Of a stretch of DNA of 64,000 bases, positions 29,585 through 41,707 are shown in pieces (the first letter of the stretch is position 1; the number at the start of each line of letters is the position of its first letter). A model generated the notes under the pieces. That model did no database searches. It was not told the DNA's origin and saw only the letters and a program-made list of their open reading frames with translations. Location: the sequence record MT710307.1. The stretch is one strand, 5' to 3'. Position numbers and translations under genes: made by a program.

Positions 29585-30757
29585 GTGGCCATGTCGTCAC
29601 CAGATTTAGATTTTATCACACTGTGTGAGGACTTCGACACAGTGGTTGCCTTGGAGTCCATAGGGGCGGGAATGAATAACCCGATGATGCGCTCTATTGC
29701 TTTGCGATGGAACGTGTTAGATGAAGCTGAGGCAGAGTGGGAAGAAGCTGTTGCCCGTGAGTCCAATGCGATGATGGAACGTGCGCAGGCGGTAGCCGAC
29801 GGTGCTGCACAAGGCAGTATTGCGAAGAAGGTTGCCAAAGACGCCGGTAAGGCTGCGGTGGGTGTGGGGATGGGTGCTGCCCGTCTGGCCGGTAAAGGGA
29901 CTGTTAAGGGCGCGAAAGCCGCAGGTAAAGGTGCTAAACACCTTTCGAGCAAACTGCTGGATAAATTCAAAGAGTGGGCAGAACACTACGGTCCTATCTT
30001 TAAAGAGAAAATCGCGGACATGACGTCGAAGTCCACCACGATGGAAAAGCGTCGCCAGAAGCTCGAGTCCAAACTGCACACGGCGGAGATTCACCCGCAA
30101 GACGTGCGCGTCCTGACGTGGGCAAGCTGCGTCTGTTACGAAGACAAGCCTGACCTTGCCAAATGTATCGAGCTGTCGAACCACAGTGAGGCGATGGCTG
30201 CCGCGGTGAAAGAGTACACCGTGAAAGTTGACCAGACCAAACTGGTTGTCGACCGCCGTAAGAAGAACGATGATGGCACGCTGGATAAAATTGGCTATCC
30301 GTCAAACGCCGCGATTCACCGCGCTTCAGGTCTCCTCGGTCGTTTTACCGAGAACGACGTCAAGGCTCGCCCGTTGGCCGGTAACGTTATCATTGTTACC
30401 CGTGGGTTCGGTGCAAAAGAGAAAGTGGAGTTTGCCGTTGCCCGTGAAGCCAAAATCGGTGGCAAGTTCGAAACACTGTCTAAGGCCGAATGTGAAAAAG
30501 CATTAGAGGCCGTTAAGCGCATTGCGCAAGCGCTCGAAGACCGCAGTGCTAAGCGTGGCGTCTTCAGCTACACCGGCATCTATGAAAACATGGAAAAGCT
30601 GCGTGAGCACATGAAGGATTTGGACGGGAACGAGCTGCGTGCCGTTACACTCCAGTTCAAGAACGCCATGGCCGTCGAAGATGCGTTTACAACAGCGCTT
30701 GTTCGTGTAGGCGATGGTCTGCTCAATTGGGTGCAGGCGTCCATTAAGGCGGGTTAA
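29585..30757 (+). CDS. Putative internal head protein with A-x-E propeptide (390 aa)
   Basis: VALES and VARES sites in an acidic N-terminal region, Ala/Lys-rich body typical of phiKZ-like head proteins. Confidence 0.6.
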   Translation: MAMSSPDLDFITLCEDFDTVVALESIGAGMNNPMMRSIALRWNVLDEAEAEWEEAVARESNAMMERAQAVADGAAQGSIAKKVAKDAGKAAVGVGMGAARLAGKGTVKGAKAAGKGAKHLSSKLLDKFKEWAEHYGPIFKEKIADMTSKSTTMEKRRQKLESKLHTAEIHPQDVRVLTWASCVCYEDKPDLAKCIELSNHSEAMAAAVKEYTVKVDQTKLVVDRRKKNDDGTLDKIGYPSNAAIHRASGLLGRFTENDVKARPLAGNVIIVTRGFGAKEKVEFAVAREAKIGGKFETLSKAECEKALEAVKRIAQALEDRSAKRGVFSYTGIYENMEKLREHMKDLDGNELRAVTLQFKNAMAVEDAFTTALVRVGDGLLNWVQASIKAG

Positions 30758-30759
30758 GC

Positions 30760-31236
30760 ATGAAAGTCGTTTTAGTTTCTAAGTTAACATCCCGGCTGGG
30801 TCAGAAGTTCCACGCCGAGTTAACCGATTTGCACAACAGTCTCTATAACGACCAGCAGGCCCGTCTTAAAGACCTGAATGGCCGAAGCGGCTTTAATGAA
30901 ATCGATGATGTCTCCGAAGTCTGGAGTGAAGGACAACAGGCTGCCGTAGCTGTAGACGACGAAGGTTGTGCGGTGGGGTTCCTGTCCTTCTCTATTCAGA
31001 CCGGTCGGTCGAACATGGGCAGTAAGTGGTTGTGGATTTACAACTTCTATGTCAACAACGACCAGCGTGGTAAAGGTGTCGGTCTCCTGCTGATGAACGC
31101 GGTACGCGACCACGGGAAAGCCAAAGGTTGTGGTTTCATGCAGCTCTACGTGCTGGACAATAACCAGCAAGCGATTGCGATGTACCAGAAGTTTGGTTTT
31201 CGCACCGAATATCGGGATATGGTGAAGGAGATTTAA
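30760..31236 (+). CDS. GNAT-family acetyltransferase
   Basis: FYVNNDQRGKGVGLLLM; LYVLDNNQQAIAMYQKFGF. Confidence 0.9.
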   Translation: MKVVLVSKLTSRLGQKFHAELTDLHNSLYNDQQARLKDLNGRSGFNEIDDVSEVWSEGQQAAVAVDDEGCAVGFLSFSIQTGRSNMGSKWLWIYNFYVNNDQRGKGVGLLLMNAVRDHGKAKGCGFMQLYVLDNNQQAIAMYQKFGFRTEYRDMVKEI

Positions 31237-33693: not shown

Positions 33694-33729
33694 CAGGCAT
33701 CCTTCGGGGTGCCTGCTTTATTTTTTTTG
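33694..33729 (+). terminator. Intrinsic terminator (UUCG)
   Basis: CAGGCATCC-TTCG-GGGTGCCTG plus T-tract. Confidence 0.85.
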
Positions 33730-33792
33730 TTCGATTACAGCAAGTGTACATTATGTGTACAGAACACTTAAAGCTTTAATGGGGAAAACGTA

Positions 33793-34441: not shown

Positions 34442-34476
34442 CCCTCTTACCTTCGGGTAAGAGGGTTTTATTTTTT
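34442..34476 (+). terminator. Intrinsic terminator (UUCG)
   Basis: CCCTCTTACC-TTCG-GGTAAGAGGG plus T-tract. Confidence 0.85.
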
Positions 34477-34510
34477 ACACCAACCGATAGTCCTATGCTT
34501 TATTCCACAA

Positions 34511-34944: not shown

Positions 34945-35415
34945 ATGAAAGCAATTTATGCCGCTGGTAAGACCCAGCACATTATCGCCCCACACGACGA
35001 ATGTTGCCCGCACCTCCATCCGTGGCAAATCGCCCCGTACTACACCGCGCAAATCGTCGGCCCTATCCGTACAGTGTTCTACACCTGTAAGTCGTGCCAC
35101 GAAGCGTTACAGAACGAAATCGCGCAGAACTTCATCCTCTGCAACGATTGCCGTAAACCGATGGCACCGGAAGAAGTGATTTGCTGGTCACCGTATGACA
35201 CCAATCCTGCTGAACCGACCATCTATCTGTGCAAAGACTGTGAGTGTGGTACGAAACATTTCGACCGTGTCGAGTACGACCGTGCGAACTTCGTACAAAG
35301 CTATCCGGTGAAACAACGTAATCTCCGCCTACTCGCCACAAGCGATGCCGGAATGAACATGCGTTATATCCCGGAGCCGATTCGTCGTCGTGTCGACCAA
35401 CACATCCAGTCGTAA
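34945..35415 (+). CDS. Cys-rich putative Zn-binding protein (156 aa)
   Basis: CCPH, CKSC, CNDC, CKDCEC. Confidence 0.65.
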   Translation: MKAIYAAGKTQHIIAPHDECCPHLHPWQIAPYYTAQIVGPIRTVFYTCKSCHEALQNEIAQNFILCNDCRKPMAPEEVICWSPYDTNPAEPTIYLCKDCECGTKHFDRVEYDRANFVQSYPVKQRNLRLLATSDAGMNMRYIPEPIRRRVDQHIQS

Positions 35416-35420
35416 AGTAT

Positions 35421-35449
35421 AAGGGGGTCTTTCCCCCTTCTTATTTTTT
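35421..35449 (+). terminator. Intrinsic terminator
   Basis: AAGGGGG-TCTTT-CCCCCTT plus T-tract. Confidence 0.7.
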
Positions 35450-35508
35450 GCCTTTTTACGCAACTTCCCTTTCCTGTGAATAACAAGAATTTGTTGCGGG
35501 GGAAATCG

Positions 35509-36516
35509 ATGCAATCGATAGCGCAATCAACCATCATTAAACCGTCGGTCGAACCGACAGAACAGCAAATCAACATCACCATTGAGCGTCTCACTTGGGG
35601 TAGCGAAAAAGCACGCGAGTATTATCATGCCTTTGGGTCACGTACCATTCCGATTAAACGGTTGAACGTTATCCTCAAAAATCCACAGTACCAAGTCTTC
35701 GGTTTACGCAACGACAGACATAAGCCACTCGGGTATGTCTCGGTCATTACCACCATGGGTGATGAAACCCTCATCATTCATCATGCAGAAGAGATTATTT
35801 CTAAGTCTCTTAACAAAGTGGCAATGATGATGTTGTTGGATCATGTCGGGTGTCGCTATGCAATGACGGTTGACGGGTCGTCTGATAACTTCGACTTCCG
35901 CAACCGCATGGGCTTTAAGCTGATTGAAAACAACTGGATGGTGAACTGTAAACCGTACGAGAAACTTCCCATCGATAAACGGATTGTGGATGTCTCTGGT
36001 TTAGAGTCACTCAGCGAACAACAGCTTGAGCAACTTACCGGTTTAATCCGCTACACCATCTACCGCGAAGGACAGACCGATCCGTTTGGTCGGGAAATCT
36101 TCCGTGAAGTGTTGCCAGAGTCGGTTGTTGAACGTGGCCGCACCAGTCAGTATAAAACACTGGTCTGGATGGATGCAGGGGATATCCTCGGTGTCGCACA
36201 ACTCCAATACGCTCAATGGGGTGAGATTATCCTGAGTGGGGTTGGGGTTGATGGTTCCCATACGGGCAAGCGCATCGGGCGCAATCTGGTTGCTGCGGCA
36301 ATACAGAAAGCGGGTATGTCTCACGAGCATCTGATGGCCACTACCTTTGCAGACAATGGGCCAATGAACCATCTGTTTGGAAACCTCTTAGGTTGGGATA
36401 TGTTGCCGGGGTCAATTGGCGTGGAGCTGGTTGAGAACGCGGTAAGCTGGAAGAAGTCGAAGAAGTATCTGGGTGCGACAGCCGGTCACGGTGCCCCAGT
36501 GTACAAAGGGGATTGA
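35509..36516 (+). CDS. Tandem GNAT-domain protein (C-terminal domain intact)
   Basis: VGVDGSHTGKRIGRNLV and TFADNGPMNHLFGNLLGW in C-half; N-half has a GNAT-like pattern ending FRNRMGF. Confidence 0.7.
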   Translation: MQSIAQSTIIKPSVEPTEQQINITIERLTWGSEKAREYYHAFGSRTIPIKRLNVILKNPQYQVFGLRNDRHKPLGYVSVITTMGDETLIIHHAEEIISKSLNKVAMMMLLDHVGCRYAMTVDGSSDNFDFRNRMGFKLIENNWMVNCKPYEKLPIDKRIVDVSGLESLSEQQLEQLTGLIRYTIYREGQTDPFGREIFREVLPESVVERGRTSQYKTLVWMDAGDILGVAQLQYAQWGEIILSGVGVDGSHTGKRIGRNLVAAAIQKAGMSHEHLMATTFADNGPMNHLFGNLLGWDMLPGSIGVELVENAVSWKKSKKYLGATAGHGAPVYKGD

Positions 36517-36517
36517 G

Positions 36518-37339
36518 ATGCGTTCTATTTTAAAATGGGTCGGTGGAAAGAAGCGAATCATCCAACCCCTGCGTAAGGTGTTCGGTGACGTCGATTGTTT
36601 CGTCGAGCCGTTCGTGGGCGCAGGGTCGGTATTCATGAACACCAACTTCCCGAAGTACATTCTCTCTGACTACAATCCCGACTTGGTTGCGGTGCTTCGT
36701 TCTGCGATGGAAGCCCCGGATGATTTGGTGGAAGCTTGTGAGCAACTCTGGACTAACGGGTGTGACCCTGAGGTCTATGATGCGCGACGGGCGATACTCA
36801 ATGACCGTGAGAACGTCACTGTCGAAGACACCATTGACCGGGCAGCTATCTTCATTTACCTGAACCGTCACGGTTACAACGGGTTGTGTCGCTACAACAA
36901 GTCAGGCGGGTATAACGTCCCTTATGGCGACCACCCAACCAAGCCGTATCTGCCAAAAGAAGAAATCCATGCGTTCTGGAAACGCTGCACCGAATCTGAA
37001 GTAGACTTACGCTGCTGTGGCTTTGAGGAGACGATTATCAATGCACCGAAAGGTTCACTGATTTACGCCGACCCTCCGTACATACCCAGCTCGAAAACTT
37101 CTTCGTTCGCGCAGTACCATAAATCCTCCTTTAACCAACAACATCAACGTCAATTGGCTAAGCTTCTAAAAGAAGCGCACCTCCGTGGTTGTCGTGTAGT
37201 CTTGTCGAACTCTGATACGCTGCTCACCAAAGACATCTACTACGGCTTCCAATGGCAGACTGTAGAGGTGGGGCGGTATTTGGGATCGAAGGCTGAAACC
37301 CGTGGACGTGTGAACGAGCTGATTGGTGTTCTGGAGTAA
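36518..37339 (+). CDS. dam: DNA adenine methyltransferase (Dam/D12 class)
   Basis: ILKWVGGK, FVEPFVGAGSV, YLNRHGYNGLCRYNKSGGYNVPYG, IYADPPY, VVLSNS. Confidence 0.92.
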   Translation: MRSILKWVGGKKRIIQPLRKVFGDVDCFVEPFVGAGSVFMNTNFPKYILSDYNPDLVAVLRSAMEAPDDLVEACEQLWTNGCDPEVYDARRAILNDRENVTVEDTIDRAAIFIYLNRHGYNGLCRYNKSGGYNVPYGDHPTKPYLPKEEIHAFWKRCTESEVDLRCCGFEETIINAPKGSLIYADPPYIPSSKTSSFAQYHKSSFNQQHQRQLAKLLKEAHLRGCRVVLSNSDTLLTKDIYYGFQWQTVEVGRYLGSKAETRGRVNELIGVLE

Positions 37340-37341
37340 CC

Positions 37342-38136
37342 ATGCACCTGTTATCGTATCCACCTGTGTACGAACGACCTGTCCTCCTCAATGGTCGAGA
37401 GGTTGAAGTTGAACGTATTTGGCAAGGCATTAAACAAACCCATCCGTTAGCGATGGACGAGGAGCATTATCTGGTGGTGTCTAACACACGCCAGACACTC
37501 CTTGTATTAAGTGGCGAACGTCACGGTGATGTGTTCCATATTCTCAATATGGTGCCGATGACCGACAAGCCCTTTTACCAGTGGAAAAACCTCATGCGTC
37601 AACTCGAAGTGGTTCACTTCGATGTGGTATTAGACCCAAGTGCTCACGTCGAGCACGGGATATGCCAGGCCATGGGACTTGAGTTCGTGACAAAGCGTGT
37701 GAAGTTTACCCCGTTTGATGTTTCGCGTTTCAACACGCGTGCGCCGATGATTCATCGTCAGGAGAACTGTTCTCTTGATGACATGGAGCGTGTGTGTCAG
37801 ATAACGAAGAAATCACTGCCGGGGTATAAGCACGTCTTAAAGGAAGTGGCGTTCGGTTTTATGGAAACGTTGGTGCGCAAACAAAACGACAAGATTACGT
37901 CGGTGTTGTTTGTTACCCAGACGCCTAATACCGTAACCGTCGCTAACTACGTTTCTGTGTTTCATCAACAGGACAGGCAGTATGCGCAGGACTTCTCGGA
38001 GTTCTTCCGCTACTTGCTGAAACTGTGTGGGACACAGAAGAAGTCGTTATATATCTCGCTGGACGCTAAGGCAGAGATACCGACTTACGATGGTATCACT
38101 CATGAGGTGGTGACACATCATTACACGATTGCTTAG
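37342..38136 (+). CDS. Hypothetical protein, possible degenerate tandem GNAT fold (264 aa)
   Basis: Two-domain beta/alpha pattern, ICQAMGLEF motif-B-like; acetyl-CoA loop not recognisable. Confidence 0.4.
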   Translation: MHLLSYPPVYERPVLLNGREVEVERIWQGIKQTHPLAMDEEHYLVVSNTRQTLLVLSGERHGDVFHILNMVPMTDKPFYQWKNLMRQLEVVHFDVVLDPSAHVEHGICQAMGLEFVTKRVKFTPFDVSRFNTRAPMIHRQENCSLDDMERVCQITKKSLPGYKHVLKEVAFGFMETLVRKQNDKITSVLFVTQTPNTVTVANYVSVFHQQDRQYAQDFSEFFRYLLKLCGTQKKSLYISLDAKAEIPTYDGITHEVVTHHYTIA

Positions 38137-38143
38137 GAGGGTT

Positions 38144-38905
38144 ATGAGAGAGATAACGAAAGAGGTGCTAGATGGCACGTATGACCAACCGCTCGGGCGT
38201 GGTGTATTAGACTGGCGTATCTTAGATCTGGCCCCCATGGAAACAAAACACATTGTTGAAGTGGGGCGTTGGCGTGTGTACCTAAAACGTCATCGTATCG
38301 AGGAAACGGCACTGCTGATTTCCGTTGACCGCTTTGGGGAGGTGGAAGAACCACTGAATCTGCTTCCCGATGTGCTGGATGTCAAAGCAGTCTTTGCTTA
38401 CTCGACGACGACTGCGGATGAAGCCCTTAAACGAATAGGGTTTGATCTGCACGCAGTGAAGTATATCATCCCGCCACGCGAGGGCATCAGGCCACCGCCG
38501 AAGATGATTGAAAACTGCCTGTTGACGGACCAAGAAGCGGCGTCCTTTAAACTGGCCGCCATTGAAGAAGAAAGCATCCGTAAAGCGGCGGAAGCGTACG
38601 GTATGGGAACAGCTGCGTTTCATCGTGTTGATTTTGGGCACGGACGTACGGCAGTTGCGCTTATCAATATCGTCGATGAACATGCCACACTGCTGACGCA
38701 TTGGGCAAGTGACTTCCAATCGCAAATGACGGTTGCTGACATCTTTAACTACATTGCCTCCTGCCAGAAGAACGGCGGGGAGTACGTGGTTAACCGTCAA
38801 ACGTTCGATGACCCAACCCCTCTGGTGGAAACGCTGGAAACCCTCAACACCTCAACACGCGGTGTTTATATTATCACAAAAGGAGTATCTGCCCATGCAA
38901 ACTAG
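38144..38905 (+). CDS. Hypothetical protein, possible degenerate tandem GNAT fold (253 aa)
   Basis: AGGAGG RBS; EALKRIGFD motif-B-like; two-domain layout like upstream gene. Confidence 0.4.
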   Translation: MREITKEVLDGTYDQPLGRGVLDWRILDLAPMETKHIVEVGRWRVYLKRHRIEETALLISVDRFGEVEEPLNLLPDVLDVKAVFAYSTTTADEALKRIGFDLHAVKYIIPPREGIRPPPKMIENCLLTDQEAASFKLAAIEEESIRKAAEAYGMGTAAFHRVDFGHGRTAVALINIVDEHATLLTHWASDFQSQMTVADIFNYIASCQKNGGEYVVNRQTFDDPTPLVETLETLNTSTRGVYIITKGVSAHAN

Positions 38906-39191
38906 CATTAATCGTTCTGTCGCGCGTTCTAAAGAAGTGGTTTACGATGTGGTCTCTGGTGAAAAGACCCTGTTCCGTGCGGTGATTGTCGAGAACAACG
39001 AACTGCTCGTGGTCTATCCGGGTGGTGAGTTCTCTAAAGCGGAAAAAGTGGCACTGGATAAACTCATCACCAAAGCGAAACACCGCGACGGGATTTCTAT
39101 CCACCGTGTGGTCAATGGACGCGAGTTAGTGGAGAACGGCAAAGACTTAGAGGTGCGTCCCGTGAGCACCCAAGTCAACGCCTTTGTATGA
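38895..39191 (+). CDS. Hypothetical protein (98 aa)
   Basis: AAGGAG RBS, ATG 38895. Confidence 0.7.
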   Translation: MQTSINRSVARSKEVVYDVVSGEKTLFRAVIVENNELLVVYPGGEFSKAEKVALDKLITKAKHRDGISIHRVVNGRELVENGKDLEVRPVSTQVNAFV

Positions 39192-39218
39192 CACCACTAA
39201 CGTTATAGAGGAATCGCA

Positions 39219-39719
39219 ATGGATGTTATCGATTTCGAACAGCTTCCACAGCACGACTTCGACCTCGGCGTCCGTGACATGGATTGCGGCTTCGAAGAAA
39301 AGGCGCGTGCGCTGTTCCAGAAATACGGCGAACTGATTATGGGCACCGACCATCCAGACATCACACTGGATGAGTTCGAGAAACTGATCGTTGGTCTCAT
39401 CACGACCCGTGCACAGGACAGAGCGTTGCTGAACGAGTTGAACTTTACCACCGTGTCCCCCGCGGATGCTGCCGGTATCTTGTCGCAGTCTATCGTTCCG
39501 AACGATGAGATTCTCGACAAGGTTGCTGCGCTACGTGGCCCGTTCGACACAGCGGTAGAAGACTATGCGCAGCAGTTAGCAGAATCGGAATACGCGATGG
39601 TCGCCCCTGAGGGTGAACAGTTGCCATCTGATGAGCAAACTGAAACTGCCCGTCTGCGTCTTGCGCGATATGTCATTACCAGTGTGCTGGTTGATGACCG
39701 TGAAGATTGTCAGCTCTAA
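39219..39719 (+). CDS. Acidic hypothetical protein (166 aa)
   Basis: GAGG RBS; terminator follows. Confidence 0.75.
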   Translation: MDVIDFEQLPQHDFDLGVRDMDCGFEEKARALFQKYGELIMGTDHPDITLDEFEKLIVGLITTRAQDRALLNELNFTTVSPADAAGILSQSIVPNDEILDKVAALRGPFDTAVEDYAQQLAESEYAMVAPEGEQLPSDEQTETARLRLARYVITSVLVDDREDCQL

Positions 39720-39727
39720 TGAAATGG

Positions 39728-39757
39728 CCTCACCTTCGGGTGAGGTTTATTTTTTTT
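39728..39757 (+). terminator. Intrinsic terminator (UUCG)
   Basis: CCTCACC-TTCG-GGTGAGG plus T-tract. Confidence 0.85.
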
Positions 39758-39817
39758 GCCTTTTTACAGAATAGCACCTATCTATGTCAAACCAAATAAC
39801 CCTGAGGATTAAAAGCA

Positions 39818-41131: not shown

Positions 41132-41168
41132 GTCCTACTCCTTCGGGAGTAGGACTGTTTTATTTTTT
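41132..41168 (+). terminator. Intrinsic terminator (UUCG)
   Basis: GTCCTACTCC-TTCG-GGAGTAGGAC plus T-tract. Confidence 0.9.
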
Positions 41169-41179
41169 AAGGACTGTCG

Positions 41180-41707
41180 ATGACTACTTTTATTGCGGGC
41201 AAGAACTACCTCGCCGCAGACCGTGCGGTAATGAAAAACCGAATGGTATTTGAAGATGCGAAGATTCGCACTATCAAAGGGCGCATCGCGTACTTCTTTG
41301 GTTCAGAGCATCCCACGCCAGACGAACGCAAGTTGCTGGAAAAGCATATCTACGATTACATCTTCGGTAAGCAGAAAGCCCAAGAGGCAGCAGAGCTGTG
41401 GTTGCTGCACTTCATGGAAAGCAATACGCTGGTTGTGATGACCCGCAAGAAGACGCTGACCTTCAGTGCTATCTCACGGCTTGCTGCGTGGTCGCCGGAG
41501 CTGGGTGCCCCAACCCGCCATACAGGACTTACTGTAACCGAAGACCTGCTTGAAACACCTGTCGTTTATGGCTCGGGTGCAGAGTTGGCACGGGCAGGAT
41601 GGGCATGCGGATTACCGCCTGAGAACATCATTCTCATGGTACAGAAAATAGACCCGATGTCAGGGCATGGCTGCGATGTGGTTTACAGAGAGGACTTGCG
41701 AAAATGA
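41180..41707 (+). CDS. HslV/proteasome-beta-like Ntn threonine peptidase
   Basis: M-TT start, LAAD, AKI (catalytic Lys equivalent), YGSG, and D-P-M-SG near C-end, the canonical order in Thr proteases. Confidence 0.7.
   Translation: MTTFIAGKNYLAADRAVMKNRMVFEDAKIRTIKGRIAYFFGSEHPTPDERKLLEKHIYDYIFGKQKAQEAAELWLLHFMESNTLVVMTRKKTLTFSAISRLAAWSPELGAPTRHTGLTVTEDLLETPVVYGSGAELARAGWACGLPPENIILMVQKIDPMSGHGCDVVYREDLRK

What the first reader, a model, noticed from the sequence alone, without database searches (positions are those of the whole stretch)
35509..38905. Dam methylase sandwiched among GNAT-fold genes: possible adenine hypermodification or acylation operon
Seen: tightly coupled unit tandem-GNAT, dam, two similar two-domain proteins (gaps of 1, 2 and 7 nt). 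Established: Mu Mom is a GNAT-fold adenine-modifying enzyme whose expression depends on Dam; a nucleus-forming phage already shields replicating DNA. Inference: the unit may add or elaborate an adenine modification protecting virion or just-injected DNA, or couple methylation with acetylation of host proteins. GNAT assignment of 37342 and 38144 is weak.
Basis: partly seen in the sequence, partly recalled or inferred. Interest (0 to 1): 0.72.

Follow-up and report, generated by a model that had tools for sequence, protein, structure and literature searches.

The report
Dam methylase inside tandem-GNAT gene array
A giant Salmonella phage carries an ordinary GATC DNA methylase gene inside a row of fast-evolving acetyltransferase-fold genes, but a related phage group keeps the row without any methylase, so a joint exotic DNA modification looks unlikely.

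Summary
The window is Salmonella jumbo phage pSal-SNUABM-04 (Machinavirus, an SPN3US relative). Four co-directional genes are separated by 1, 2 and 7 nt: gp107 (GNAT), gp108 (Dam), gp109 and gp110.

The unit is larger than reported. It is a six-gene operon (gp107 to gp112, 35509-39719). It is bounded by two terminator hairpins, each followed by the same TTTGCCTTTTTAC motif.

Dam is a standard orphan GATC methyltransferase. It has DPPY and FxGxG motifs and keeps the E. coli Dam base-contact residues.

AlphaFold models of gp109 (pLDDT 92) and gp110 (pLDDT 79.5) best match tandem-GNAT structures such as VipF and ORF14 (Foldseek E 4e-12 and 2e-8). Only the C-terminal domain of gp107 keeps a recognisable acetyl-CoA loop.

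None of the three matches the Mom family.

The GNAT-Dam-gp109 order is kept in Seoulvirus, Machinavirus and Wellingtonvirus. Derbicusvirus has the same array in the same place (GNAT, GNAT, GNAT-like, gp111-like) with no dam. The complete Derbicus genome has no Dam at all.

Best reading: dam sits in a diversifying array of tandem-GNAT paralogues and works independently of them. This is a useful annotation, not a new system.

GATC is strongly depleted across the whole clade.

The parts
35421..35439 (+). Terminator-like GC hairpin with a T-run, ending the upstream unit (gp106).
   Evidence: Terminator scan and sequence. A hairpin plus T-run sits at the same position in 8 relatives.
35447..35459 (+). 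Promoter-like motif TTTGCCTTTTTAC, about 50 nt upstream of the gp107 start. Core is (C/T)TTTTTAC(A/G).
   Evidence: There are two exact copies in the window, each just after a terminator. The core TTTTTAC is conserved upstream of the GNAT gene in all 8 relatives, although the flanks have diverged. The function is inferred. Jumbo-phage early promoters are AT-rich motifs of about 10 nt (PMC7598289).
35509..36516 (+). gp107, a 335-aa two-domain GNAT protein. The N-terminal domain (about aa 1-160) is degenerate. The C-terminal domain (about aa 165-300) is a GNAT with an acetyl-CoA loop.
   Evidence: PF00583 at E 3.1e-8, 34.3 bits against a cutoff of 20.7, residues 210-295. The PDB profile search gives nourseothricin/streptothricin acetyltransferases, NAA30 and VipF. 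The Kwan orthologue matches the gp109 model at E 2.9e-14 over 274 columns. hhalign against the gp109 family gives E 3.6e-4.
36259..36288 (+). gp107 beta4-alpha3 cofactor loop, HTGKRIGRNL. G257, R258 and L260 are invariant.
   Evidence: Alignment A8. SPN3US (HRKRGIGRRL) and L012 (HRGRGIGRTL) carry the canonical R-x-x-G-x-G form. pSal deviates at two positions.
36518..37339 (+). gp108, an orphan Dam-family N6-adenine DNA methyltransferase. Predicted target is GATC.
   Evidence: PF02086 at 5.4e-52. TIGR00571 at 236.9 bits against a cutoff of 114.85. Best PADLOC model is 'orphan methyltransferase'. E. coli Dam at 4.7e-58 over residues 2-271.
36605..36628 (+). Dam S-adenosylmethionine-binding motif EPFVGAGS (FxGxG).
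36875..36928 (+). Dam DNA-recognition segment YNGLCRYN...YNVPYG. It contains the equivalents of E. coli Y119, N120, L122, R124 and P134.
   Evidence: Alignment to 4gol/2g1p. The roles of these residues are described in PMC4417163.
37070..37081 (+). Dam catalytic motif DPPY.
37342..38136 (+). gp109, a 264-aa tandem-GNAT-fold protein (domain 1 about aa 1-124, domain 2 about aa 137-264) with no canonical CoA loop.
   Evidence: The AF2 model has pLDDT 92 and pTM 0.82. Foldseek against PDB: VipF 6wqb at 3.6e-12, ORF14 2wpw, MAB_4324, MshD, Eis and MprF. All of the top 50 are GNAT-type. The independent BFVD model of the same protein matches at TM 0.98. There is no Pfam hit.
38144..38905 (+). gp110, a 253-aa tandem-GNAT-fold protein (domains about aa 21-109 and 122-245). 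Its N-terminal 40 aa are conserved. It has no canonical CoA loop.
   Evidence: The AF2 best model has pLDDT 79.5 and pTM 0.71. The other four models score 47-63. Foldseek against PDB: VipF at 1.7e-8, 2wpw, 3tt2 and 3frm. There is no meaningful Pfam hit.
38895..39191 (+). gp111, a 98-aa protein of unknown function. It overlaps the end of gp110 by 11 nt. Its orthologues close the array in every relative, including the dam-less Derbicus.
   Evidence: phrog_7896. No Pfam or PDB match.
39219..39719 (+). gp112, a 166-aa protein of unknown function and the last gene of the unit.
   Evidence: phrog_8221. It is 45-46% identical to its SPN3US and Wellington orthologues.
39726..39747 (+). Terminator-like hairpin with a T-run, ending the operon. 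The second TTTGCCTTTTTAC copy follows at 39755-39767.

Best explanation
This is one conserved transcription unit of SPN3US-like, probably nucleus-forming, jumbo phages. The order is promoter-like motif, gp107, gp108 (dam), gp109, gp110, gp111, gp112, terminator.

gp108 is an ordinary orphan Dam enzyme. It puts N6-methyl on the adenine of the few GATC sites left in the phage genome. My inference is that the phage needs its own copy because its DNA replicates inside a protein shell that excludes host enzymes such as host Dam. Methylated GATC would protect progeny DNA from nucleases that cut unmethylated GATC. The clade-wide avoidance of GATC lowers exposure further.

gp107, gp109 and gp110 are very diverged paralogues of one two-domain (tandem) GNAT family. 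The family also includes a third downstream family in SPN3US and ChrisDB, and gp102 to gp104 of Derbicus.

gp107 keeps an acetyl-CoA-binding C-terminal domain. It is most likely an active N-acetyltransferase acting on a protein or a small amine. Its nearest sequence neighbours are streptothricin acetyltransferases and protein N-terminal acetyltransferases.

gp109 and gp110 have lost the canonical cofactor loop. They are either non-canonical acyltransferases or substrate-binding pseudoenzymes.

The array evolves fast and varies in copy number. That pattern fits a host-takeover or counter-defence family. dam lies inside the array by insertion (or was lost from it in Derbicusvirus) and shares its promoter, but it does not need the GNATs, nor they it.

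Shown here: gene structure, folds, motifs, synteny and the absence of Dam in Derbicus. Inferred: early timing, nuclear location of Dam, substrates, and independence of function.
For: - Operon bounds and conserved promoter-like motif.
- Dam identity and residues.
- Tandem-GNAT folds.
- gp107 active-type loop and PDB neighbours. The NCBIfam hits to STAT and MshD are weak.
- Relation of gp107 to gp109.
- Variable array composition, where A, B and C are the three downstream tandem-GNAT-like families (A = gp109, B = SPN3US gp159 / ChrisDB gp123, C = gp110): SPN3US has GNAT-Dam-A-B, ChrisDB has A-B-C, pSal and Wellington have A-C, and L012 has A only.
- Fast divergence between pSal and SPN3US: GNAT 29% and gp109 28% identity, against Dam 53%, gp111 47%, gp112 46% and TMP kinase 43%.
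- Derbicus and Phobos carry TMP kinase, GNAT, GNAT, gp104 and the gp111 orthologue with no dam.
- Dam homologue in the complete Derbicus genome: none. The best tblastn E is 0.38, against 1e-93 for the positive control. No methyltransferase is annotated there.
- Restriction-enzyme partner for Dam in the operon: none detected. There are no nuclease hits in Pfam, NCBIfam or PADLOC.
- GATC depletion: O/E 0.31-0.40 in the window and 0.16-0.57 in relatives.
Against: - The GNAT-Dam-gp109 order and shared promoter are kept in every dam-bearing relative, even where the GNAT-fold proteins have diverged to 18-28% identity (Dam itself stays about 50%). That would also be expected of a functional module. 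Because these genomes are collinear over the whole region, synteny cannot separate the two readings.
- No substrate is known for any of the GNAT proteins.
- Loss of the canonical CoA loop in gp109 and gp110 was judged from sequence placed on predicted secondary structure, not from a bound-ligand model.
- The gp110 model is only moderately confident.
- Early expression and nuclear import of Dam are not shown.
- Derbicus infects a Dam-positive host, so host m6A could in principle substitute for a phage Dam.
Confidence: 0.55

Rival explanations
1. The GNAT-fold proteins and Dam form a DNA hypermodification module. This would be either Mom-like N6-acylation of adenine or further elaboration of m6A, protecting virion or newly injected DNA.
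For: Mom is a GNAT-superfamily enzyme that acylates N6 of adenine, and jumbo phages do carry Mom-type systems (PMC7824862). The GNAT-fold genes share a promoter with dam and abut it in four lineages. gp109 and gp110 lack the canonical acetyl-CoA loop, so an unusual donor or acceptor is possible.
Against: There is no hit to Pfam Mom PF25680, and hhalign against Mu Mom gives probability 0.1%. A Mom structure matches only at the level of any single GNAT domain (E 4.5e-3, TMq 0.24). The closest folds are tandem GNATs acting on proteins or small molecules. Derbicusvirus keeps the array with no dam anywhere in its genome. With GATC this depleted, few target sites remain for such a system.
Confidence: 0.07
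2. A coupled protein-level module. The GNAT proteins acetylate, or bind and regulate, Dam itself or host proteins that read GATC methylation, such as host Dam, MutH or SeqA. Methylation and acetylation would then act together on one pathway.
For: The genes are co-transcribed and probably translationally coupled, with 1-7 nt gaps and SD sites. The order is conserved in dam-bearing genera. gp107's sequence neighbours include protein N-terminal acetyltransferases such as NAA30, RimI and ARD1.
Against: The GNAT array exists without a phage Dam in Derbicusvirus. The number and type of GNAT paralogues vary freely while Dam stays constant. There is no co-variation or interaction evidence.
Confidence: 0.1
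3. gp109 and gp110 are catalytically dead GNAT-fold pseudoenzymes. They would act as binders, for example decoys or inhibitors of a host defence or toxin, or specificity subunits for gp107. Only gp107 would be an enzyme.
For: Neither domain of gp109 or gp110 has an R/Q-x-x-G-x-G/A loop. The gp109 family has very few conserved polar residues: only M1, G112 and L166 are invariant, with R119 and H260 nearly so. There are no Pfam GNAT hits. The families evolve fast and turn over.
Against: Many active GNAT relatives lack the consensus loop, including the aminoacyl-tRNA-dependent Fem and MprF types, and these appear among the fold hits. Absence of a motif was judged without a ligand-bound model. The strongly conserved residues in gp110 (E33, T34, K35, H36, Q192, D199, Y203) could form an active site.
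Confidence: 0.2
4. gp109 and gp110 are aminoacyl-tRNA-dependent transferases of the Fem, MprF or L/F-transferase type. These are tandem-GNAT enzymes that do not use CoA.
For: Foldseek hits of gp109 include aminoacyl-phosphatidylglycerol synthase/MprF at about E 2e-7 and an aminoacyl-tRNA-dependent peptide synthase. BFVD lists a FemAB family protein at 8e-5. The CoA loop is absent.
Against: These hits rank below the CoA-dependent tandem GNATs (VipF, ORF14, MshD) and have lower TM-scores, 0.36-0.39 against about 0.5. There is no sequence match to the Fem or DUF2156 families.
Confidence: 0.05

Closest known systems
E. coli / gamma-proteobacterial Dam (orphan GATC N6-adenine methyltransferase; PDB 2g1p, 4gol) and phage-borne Dam copies such as P1 Dmt and P2-like prophage Dam
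   Same: Full-length alignment at E 5e-58. DPPY and FxGxG motifs are present, as are the equivalents of K9, Y119, N120, L122, R124 and P134. No partner endonuclease was found.
   Different: It is encoded by a jumbo phage of a chimallin-bearing clade whose genome is about threefold depleted in GATC. It sits inside a GNAT-paralogue array. E. coli R137 and Y138 are replaced by D and H. Activity and specificity are untested.
Tandem-GNAT proteins: Legionella VipF (6wqb, 7wx7), clavulanate ORF14 (2wpw), MAB_4324 (7q3a), mycothiol synthase MshD (2c27), Eis
   Same: These are the best fold matches for both gp109 and gp110, with two GNAT domains in one chain of about 250-330 aa. The gp107 C-terminal domain also hits VipF and ORF14 by sequence profile.
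   Different: Sequence identity is only 8-13%. TM-scores are about 0.5, so the domain orientation differs. gp109 and gp110 lack the acetyl-CoA loop. The resemblance is of fold only, and no shared substrate or role is implied.
Phage Mu Mom (Pfam PF25680), a GNAT-superfamily adenine N6-acyl DNA modification enzyme
   Same: It belongs to the GNAT superfamily, is phage-encoded, and has a link to Dam biology.
   Different: Mom is a single-domain protein. None of gp107, gp109 or gp110 shows a sequence or profile match to it. Mom's link to Dam is transcriptional control by host Dam, not gene adjacency.
Phage GNAT enzymes that modify host or defence proteins, such as phiKMV-group Rac (cited in PMC7824862) and the anti-CRISPR acetyltransferase AcrVA5 (from my own knowledge, not checked here)
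   Same: Phage-encoded GNAT proteins used for host takeover or counter-defence. Iyer et al. predict the same role for the many jumbo-phage GNATs.
   Different: Those are single-domain enzymes with known targets. Here there is an array of two-domain paralogues, mostly without a cofactor loop, and no target is known.

Membership tests
Dam family (PF02086 / TIGR00571) | Whole-protein profile score above the curated cutoffs. | tested here: met
   PF02086 at 177.5 bits against 22. TIGR00571 at 236.9 bits against 114.85.
Dam family (PF02086 / TIGR00571) | Catalytic DPPY motif and FxGxG AdoMet-binding motif. | tested here: met
   DPPY at aa 185-188 and EPFVGAGS at aa 30-37.
Dam family (PF02086 / TIGR00571) | GATC-reading residues of E. 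coli Dam: R124, Y119, N120, L122, P134 and K9. | tested here: met
   All are conserved in the pairwise HMMER alignment. Their roles are given in PMC4417163. Y138 is replaced by H and R137 by D.
Dam family (PF02086 / TIGR00571) | Methylation of GATC adenine in DNA. | not testable with these tools
   Needs DpnI/MboI digests or SMRT sequencing.
Type II restriction-modification system | A cognate endonuclease encoded next to the methyltransferase. | tested here: not met
   The neighbours are GNAT-fold or small proteins with no nuclease hits. The best PADLOC model is 'orphan methyltransferase'.
GNAT superfamily (gp107 C-terminal domain) | Pfam GNAT profile score above the gathering threshold. | tested here: met
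   PF00583 at 34.3 bits against 20.7. PF13673 at 27.1 bits against 23.6.
GNAT superfamily (gp107 C-terminal domain) | R/Q-x-x-G-x-G/A pyrophosphate-binding loop between beta4 and alpha3. | tested here: inconclusive
   The orthologues are canonical: SPN3US has RKRGIG and L012 has RGRGIG. pSal has TGKRIG, with only the last G kept. G257, R258 and L260 are invariant.
Tandem-GNAT fold (gp107 N-terminal domain) | A GNAT fold in the N-terminal half. | tested here: inconclusive
   There is no Pfam hit in 7 orthologues. Support is indirect: the Kwan orthologue aligns to the gp109 model over 274 columns (E 2.9e-14), and hhalign aligns both domains in register (E 3.6e-4).
Tandem-GNAT fold (gp109) | Two GNAT-type alpha/beta domains by structure comparison. 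| tested here: met
   pLDDT 92. The top 50 PDB hits are all GNAT-type, best at 3.6e-12.
Tandem-GNAT fold (gp110) | Two GNAT-type alpha/beta domains by structure comparison. | tested here: met
   The best model has pLDDT 79.5, although the other four score 47-63. Top PDB hits are tandem GNATs, best at 1.7e-8.
Active acyl-CoA N-acyltransferase (gp109, gp110) | A recognisable CoA pyrophosphate-binding loop and conserved catalytic residues. | tested here: not met
   The beta4-alpha3 segments carry no G-x-G/A. There is no Pfam GNAT hit. Cofactor binding itself cannot be tested here.
Mom family (PF25680) | A sequence-profile match to Mom. | tested here: not met
   Mu Mom scores 2.4e-75. gp107, gp109 and gp110 give no hit at E up to 1. 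hhalign probability is about 0.1%.
Mom family (PF25680) | Production of N6-acyl adenine in DNA. | not testable with these tools
   Needs nucleoside LC-MS.

The most novel reading that the evidence does not exclude
The tandem-GNAT array and Dam act together on DNA. At least one of the cofactor-loop-less paralogues (gp109 or gp110) would use a non-CoA donor to add a new adduct at or near GATC adenines. Alternatively, it would acylate the packaged or injected nucleoprotein so that the genome survives the interval before the phage nucleus forms. The dam-less Derbicusvirus array would then be a variant relying on host methylation.
Probability: 0.06. Interest if true: 0.75.

Novelty: new member of a known kind. 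Interest (0 to 1): 0.3.

Why it matters
- Two 'hypothetical proteins' conserved across SPN3US-like jumbo phages get a fold-level annotation. They belong to a fast-diversifying tandem-GNAT family, which makes them candidates for host-takeover or counter-defence functions. These can be tested by ordinary knockouts, localisation and acetylome work.
- The attractive 'Dam plus GNAT means new DNA modification' idea is largely removed, because a sister genus keeps the array without Dam.
- One modest, testable question remains. Do these probably nucleus-forming phages carry their own Dam because host Dam is excluded from the shell, and why is GATC about three- to fivefold depleted across the clade whether or not Dam is present?

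Tried and rejected
- **Pairwise and profile comparisons among the downstream families (A = gp109, B = SPN3US gp159 / ChrisDB gp123, C = gp110).** hhalign probabilities were only 0.5-2.5%. Homology among them cannot be shown by sequence. Family B was not modelled.
- **HMM searches of all window ORFs with the four family profiles.** No further paralogues were found. The only near-hit was the gp110 profile against gp109, E 0.047.
- **Pfam on gp107 N-terminal halves.** Nothing.
- **Scan of bacterial genomes with the gp107 alignment.** The call returned an error because the alignment has no sufficiently conserved stretch. Distribution outside phages was therefore not examined.
- **Protein searches of the big databases.** Only narrow families turned up: 2, 3, 9 and 11 proteins. 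All contigs examined were collinear jumbo-phage genomes, so synteny is not independent evidence of functional coupling.
- **A wider promoter consensus (TTATTTTTT).** It gave only 6 sites and was abandoned.
- **gp111 and gp112.** No Pfam, NCBIfam, PADLOC or PDB signal.
- **An NPPY motif in Derbicus.** It lies in the annotated helicase gp38 and was dismissed as chance.
- **Literature.** There is no mention of SPN3US gp104 to gp108 in the two SPN3US virion papers searched. The supplement of one of them does not mention gp104 to gp106. This is absence of evidence only.

Full report
**Identity of the window**

Bases 35000-39500 of the window are 100% identical to Salmonella phage pSal-SNUABM-04 (MT710307.1, 239.6 kb, genus Machinavirus). 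Window coordinate plus 62000 gives the record coordinate. Erwinia phages Machina, Huxley and Parshik are 96% identical. The record annotates the four genes as gp107 'putative GCN5-related N-acetyltransferase', gp108 'putative DNA adenine methylase', and two hypothetical proteins, gp109 and gp110.

The relatives are SPN3US-like jumbo phages. SPN3US has a diverged chimallin homologue (PMC9365700). Calling this a nucleus-forming phage is therefore reasonable, but it is an inference for this particular phage.

**The observation**

The four ORFs and their 1, 2 and 7 nt gaps are exactly as described. Each start is preceded by a Shine-Dalgarno-like site.

The unit is larger than the finding. gp111 overlaps the end of gp110 by 11 nt, and gp112 follows after 27 nt. 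The block is bracketed by two intrinsic-terminator-like hairpins, at 35421-35439 and 39726-39747. Each hairpin is followed a few bases later by the identical 13-mer TTTGCCTTTTTAC.

In eight relatives the region upstream of the GNAT gene has the same layout: stop codon, GC hairpin, T-run, (C/T)TTTTTAC(A/G), then about 45 nt to the ATG. The core motif is kept although the flanks have diverged. Jumbo phages with their own RNA polymerases have AT-rich motifs of about 10 nt upstream of early operons (PMC7598289). I therefore read this as a discrete, probably early, six-gene operon. The timing is inferred, not shown.

**Dam**

- gp108 scores 5e-52 on PF02086.
- It passes the NCBIfam dam model.
- Its best PADLOC model is 'orphan methyltransferase'.
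- It aligns end to end with E. coli Dam structures at E 5e-58.
- DPPY and the FxGxG AdoMet motif are present.
- The equivalents of E. coli K9, Y119, N120, L122, R124 and P134 are all conserved. R124 sets the C:G requirement at position 4, and Y119 intercalates (PMC4417163).
- No nuclease partner is detectable in the operon.

The expected product is plain m6A at GATC.

**The flanking genes**

Sequence methods see a GNAT only in the C-terminal half of gp107. The profile search against PDB gives streptothricin/nourseothricin acetyltransferases, NAA30, RimI-type enzymes and VipF.

The cofactor loop of gp107 is canonical in SPN3US and in the metagenomic relative L012. It is partly altered in pSal.

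gp109 and gp110 have no Pfam hit and belong to very narrow families. I built alignments of 13 and 11 sequences and modelled both proteins:

| Protein | pLDDT / pTM | Best Foldseek hit in PDB |
|---|---|---|
| gp109 | 92 / 0.82 | VipF, 3.6e-12 |
| gp110 | 79.5 / 0.71 (best of five; the rest are poor) | VipF, 1.7e-8 |

For both models the top PDB hits are tandem-GNAT proteins. After Legionella VipF come the clavulanate ORF14, MAB_4324, 3frm, 3tt2, MshD and Eis.

The viral structure library gave three useful results:
- Its own independent model of gp109 matches at TM 0.98.
- The Kwan orthologue of gp107 is the first hit outside gp109's own family, at 2.9e-14 over 274 columns.
- A Derbicus GNAT matches at 6e-13.

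hhalign of the gp107 and gp109 families aligns both domains in register (E 3.6e-4, probability 37%).

So gp107, gp109 and gp110 are three very diverged two-domain GNAT paralogues. The evidence for an N-terminal GNAT domain in gp107 is indirect. Neither domain of gp109 or gp110 shows the R/Q-x-x-G-x-G/A loop.

**Linkage to dam in relatives**

A, B and C below are my labels for the three downstream tandem-GNAT-like families: A is the gp109 family, B is SPN3US gp159 / ChrisDB gp123, and C is the gp110 family.

| Phage or contig | Gene order at the locus |
|---|---|
| SPN3US (Seoulvirus) | GNAT, Dam, A, B, gp111-like |
| ChrisDB | GNAT, Dam, A, B, C, gp111-like |
| pSal / Machina | GNAT, Dam, A, C, gp111 |
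| Wellington, pEa_SNUABM_11 | GNAT, Dam, A, C-like, gp111-like |
| Metagenomic contig L012 (the most distant relative) | GNAT, Dam, A, small protein |

The GNAT-Dam-A core is constant, while the other paralogues come and go. All of these genomes are collinear across the whole region (TMP kinase, HTH protein and so on), so this is not independent evidence of functional coupling.

The GNAT paralogues are the fastest-evolving genes here. They are 24-29% identical between genera, against 51-53% for Dam and 36-56% for gp111, gp112 and gp113.

**The decisive comparison: Derbicusvirus**

In Derbicus and Phobos the same locus reads TMP kinase, gp102, gp103, gp104, gp105:
- gp102 is in the gp107 family and has a Pfam GNAT hit.
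- gp103 is a second gp107-like protein with a canonical RLKGIG loop (sequence).
- gp104 has no Pfam hit. It has weak links to gp103 and to the gp110 profile.
- gp105 is a clear gp111 orthologue (E 2e-14).

There is no dam in that array. I fetched the whole 223,950-bp Derbicus genome. No methyltransferase is annotated. tblastn with pSal Dam finds nothing better than E 0.38, while the Wellington positive control gives 1e-93.

So the tandem-GNAT array, closed by the gp111 orthologue, is maintained without any phage Dam.

**Mom**

- Pfam has a Mom family, PF25680. Mu Mom scores 2.4e-75 on it.
- None of the three GNAT-fold proteins hits it.
- Profile comparison with Mu Mom gives probability 0.1%.
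- A phage Mom model is only a weak single-domain match to gp109 (E 4.5e-3, TMq 0.24).
- Mu's dependence on Dam is regulatory and does not predict adjacency.

**Interpretation**

The best-supported reading is that an ordinary orphan Dam lies inside a diversifying array of tandem-GNAT paralogues and shares their promoter. The two kinds of protein do different jobs.

gp107 is probably an active acetyl-CoA-dependent N-acetyltransferase. gp109 and gp110 are either non-canonical transferases or binding pseudoenzymes. Their fast evolution and copy-number turnover fit host takeover or counter-defence. Iyer et al. make the same prediction for jumbo-phage GNATs in general (PMC7824862).

The likely purpose of Dam is to methylate the remaining GATC sites of a genome that replicates where host Dam cannot reach. 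This is an inference.

I give this reading 0.55. Of the rest:
- 0.10 goes to a coupled protein-level module.
- 0.20 and 0.05 go to the pseudoenzyme and aminoacyl-tRNA variants for gp109 and gp110. These do not conflict with the main reading.

**GATC depletion (side observation)**

- GATC is the most depleted 4-bp palindrome in the window. There are 100 sites, against 250 expected from base composition or 327 from a Markov model.
- It is depleted in every relative's locus, with O/E 0.16-0.57.
- In the whole Derbicus genome there are 194 sites against 940 expected (O/E 0.21), with no Dam present.
- GATC avoidance is therefore a clade trait that does not depend on the phage Dam.

**Verdict**

The fold assignment is confirmed. 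The exotic functional inference is not supported. This is a new annotation of members of known kinds and is of modest interest.

Noticed in passing
whole window; also L001-L012, L014, L015 and the Derbicus genome (L014, L016-L020): GATC is about three- to fivefold under-represented. The window has 100 sites against 250-327 expected. Relatives' loci have O/E 0.16-0.57. The dam-less Derbicus genome has 194 against 940. CTAG is also depleted in the window (20 sites, O/E 0.36).
   Followed up: partly
window 33694-33740, 34442-34480, 35421-35459, 39726-39767, 41132-41170: A recurring intergenic layout: GC hairpin (often with a TTCG loop), T-run, then a (C/T)TTTTTAC-type motif. It is conserved upstream of the GNAT gene in 8 relatives. 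It is a candidate clade-specific promoter overlapping the terminators.
   Followed up: partly
window 29585-30757 and 30760-31236: A phiKZ-type internal head (ejection) protein gene is followed at 2 nt by a small single-domain GNAT gene. The same pair occurs in the metagenomic contig L012 and in Derbicus and Phobos (gp96-gp97).
   Followed up: no
BFVD hits to the gp109 model (Huxley A0A1B2IDM8, Kwan A0A1B2IE03 and A0A1B2IBG0, about 213-215 aa): More proteins of about 214 aa from these phages match the tandem-GNAT model at E 1e-7 to 2e-6. The GNAT-like family may therefore be larger than the operon. I could not place them in the window by sequence.
   Followed up: partly
window 38144-38263 (gp110 residues 1-40): The N-terminal 40 residues (MREIT..GRG..WR..ETKHIVE) are the most conserved part of the gp110 family. 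The model is nevertheless unconfident for residues 1-20. This could be an interaction or targeting segment.
   Followed up: no
L003:6571-6849 (SPN3US orthologue of gp111) versus Dam residues about 200-250: There is a weak blastp match between the small gp111-family protein and the C-terminal part of Dam (E 0.001 and 0.009 in a tiny database). It is probably chance.
   Followed up: no
P0016 (285 aa, from the representative search): It matches the gp109 profile in 11 separate stretches, all to profile positions around 40-79. It may be a repeat protein built from one GNAT hairpin, or an artefact.
   Followed up: no
L014:3827-5447 (Derbicus): In Derbicus the thymidylate kinase gene abuts the first GNAT gene with a 1-nt gap. 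In pSal two genes and several terminators lie between them.
   Followed up: no
window 41180-41707 and downstream: An HslV-like peptidase gene is annotated here. An HslU-like ATPase is annotated at the corresponding place in ChrisDB and Derbicus. This comes from the record annotation only.
   Followed up: no
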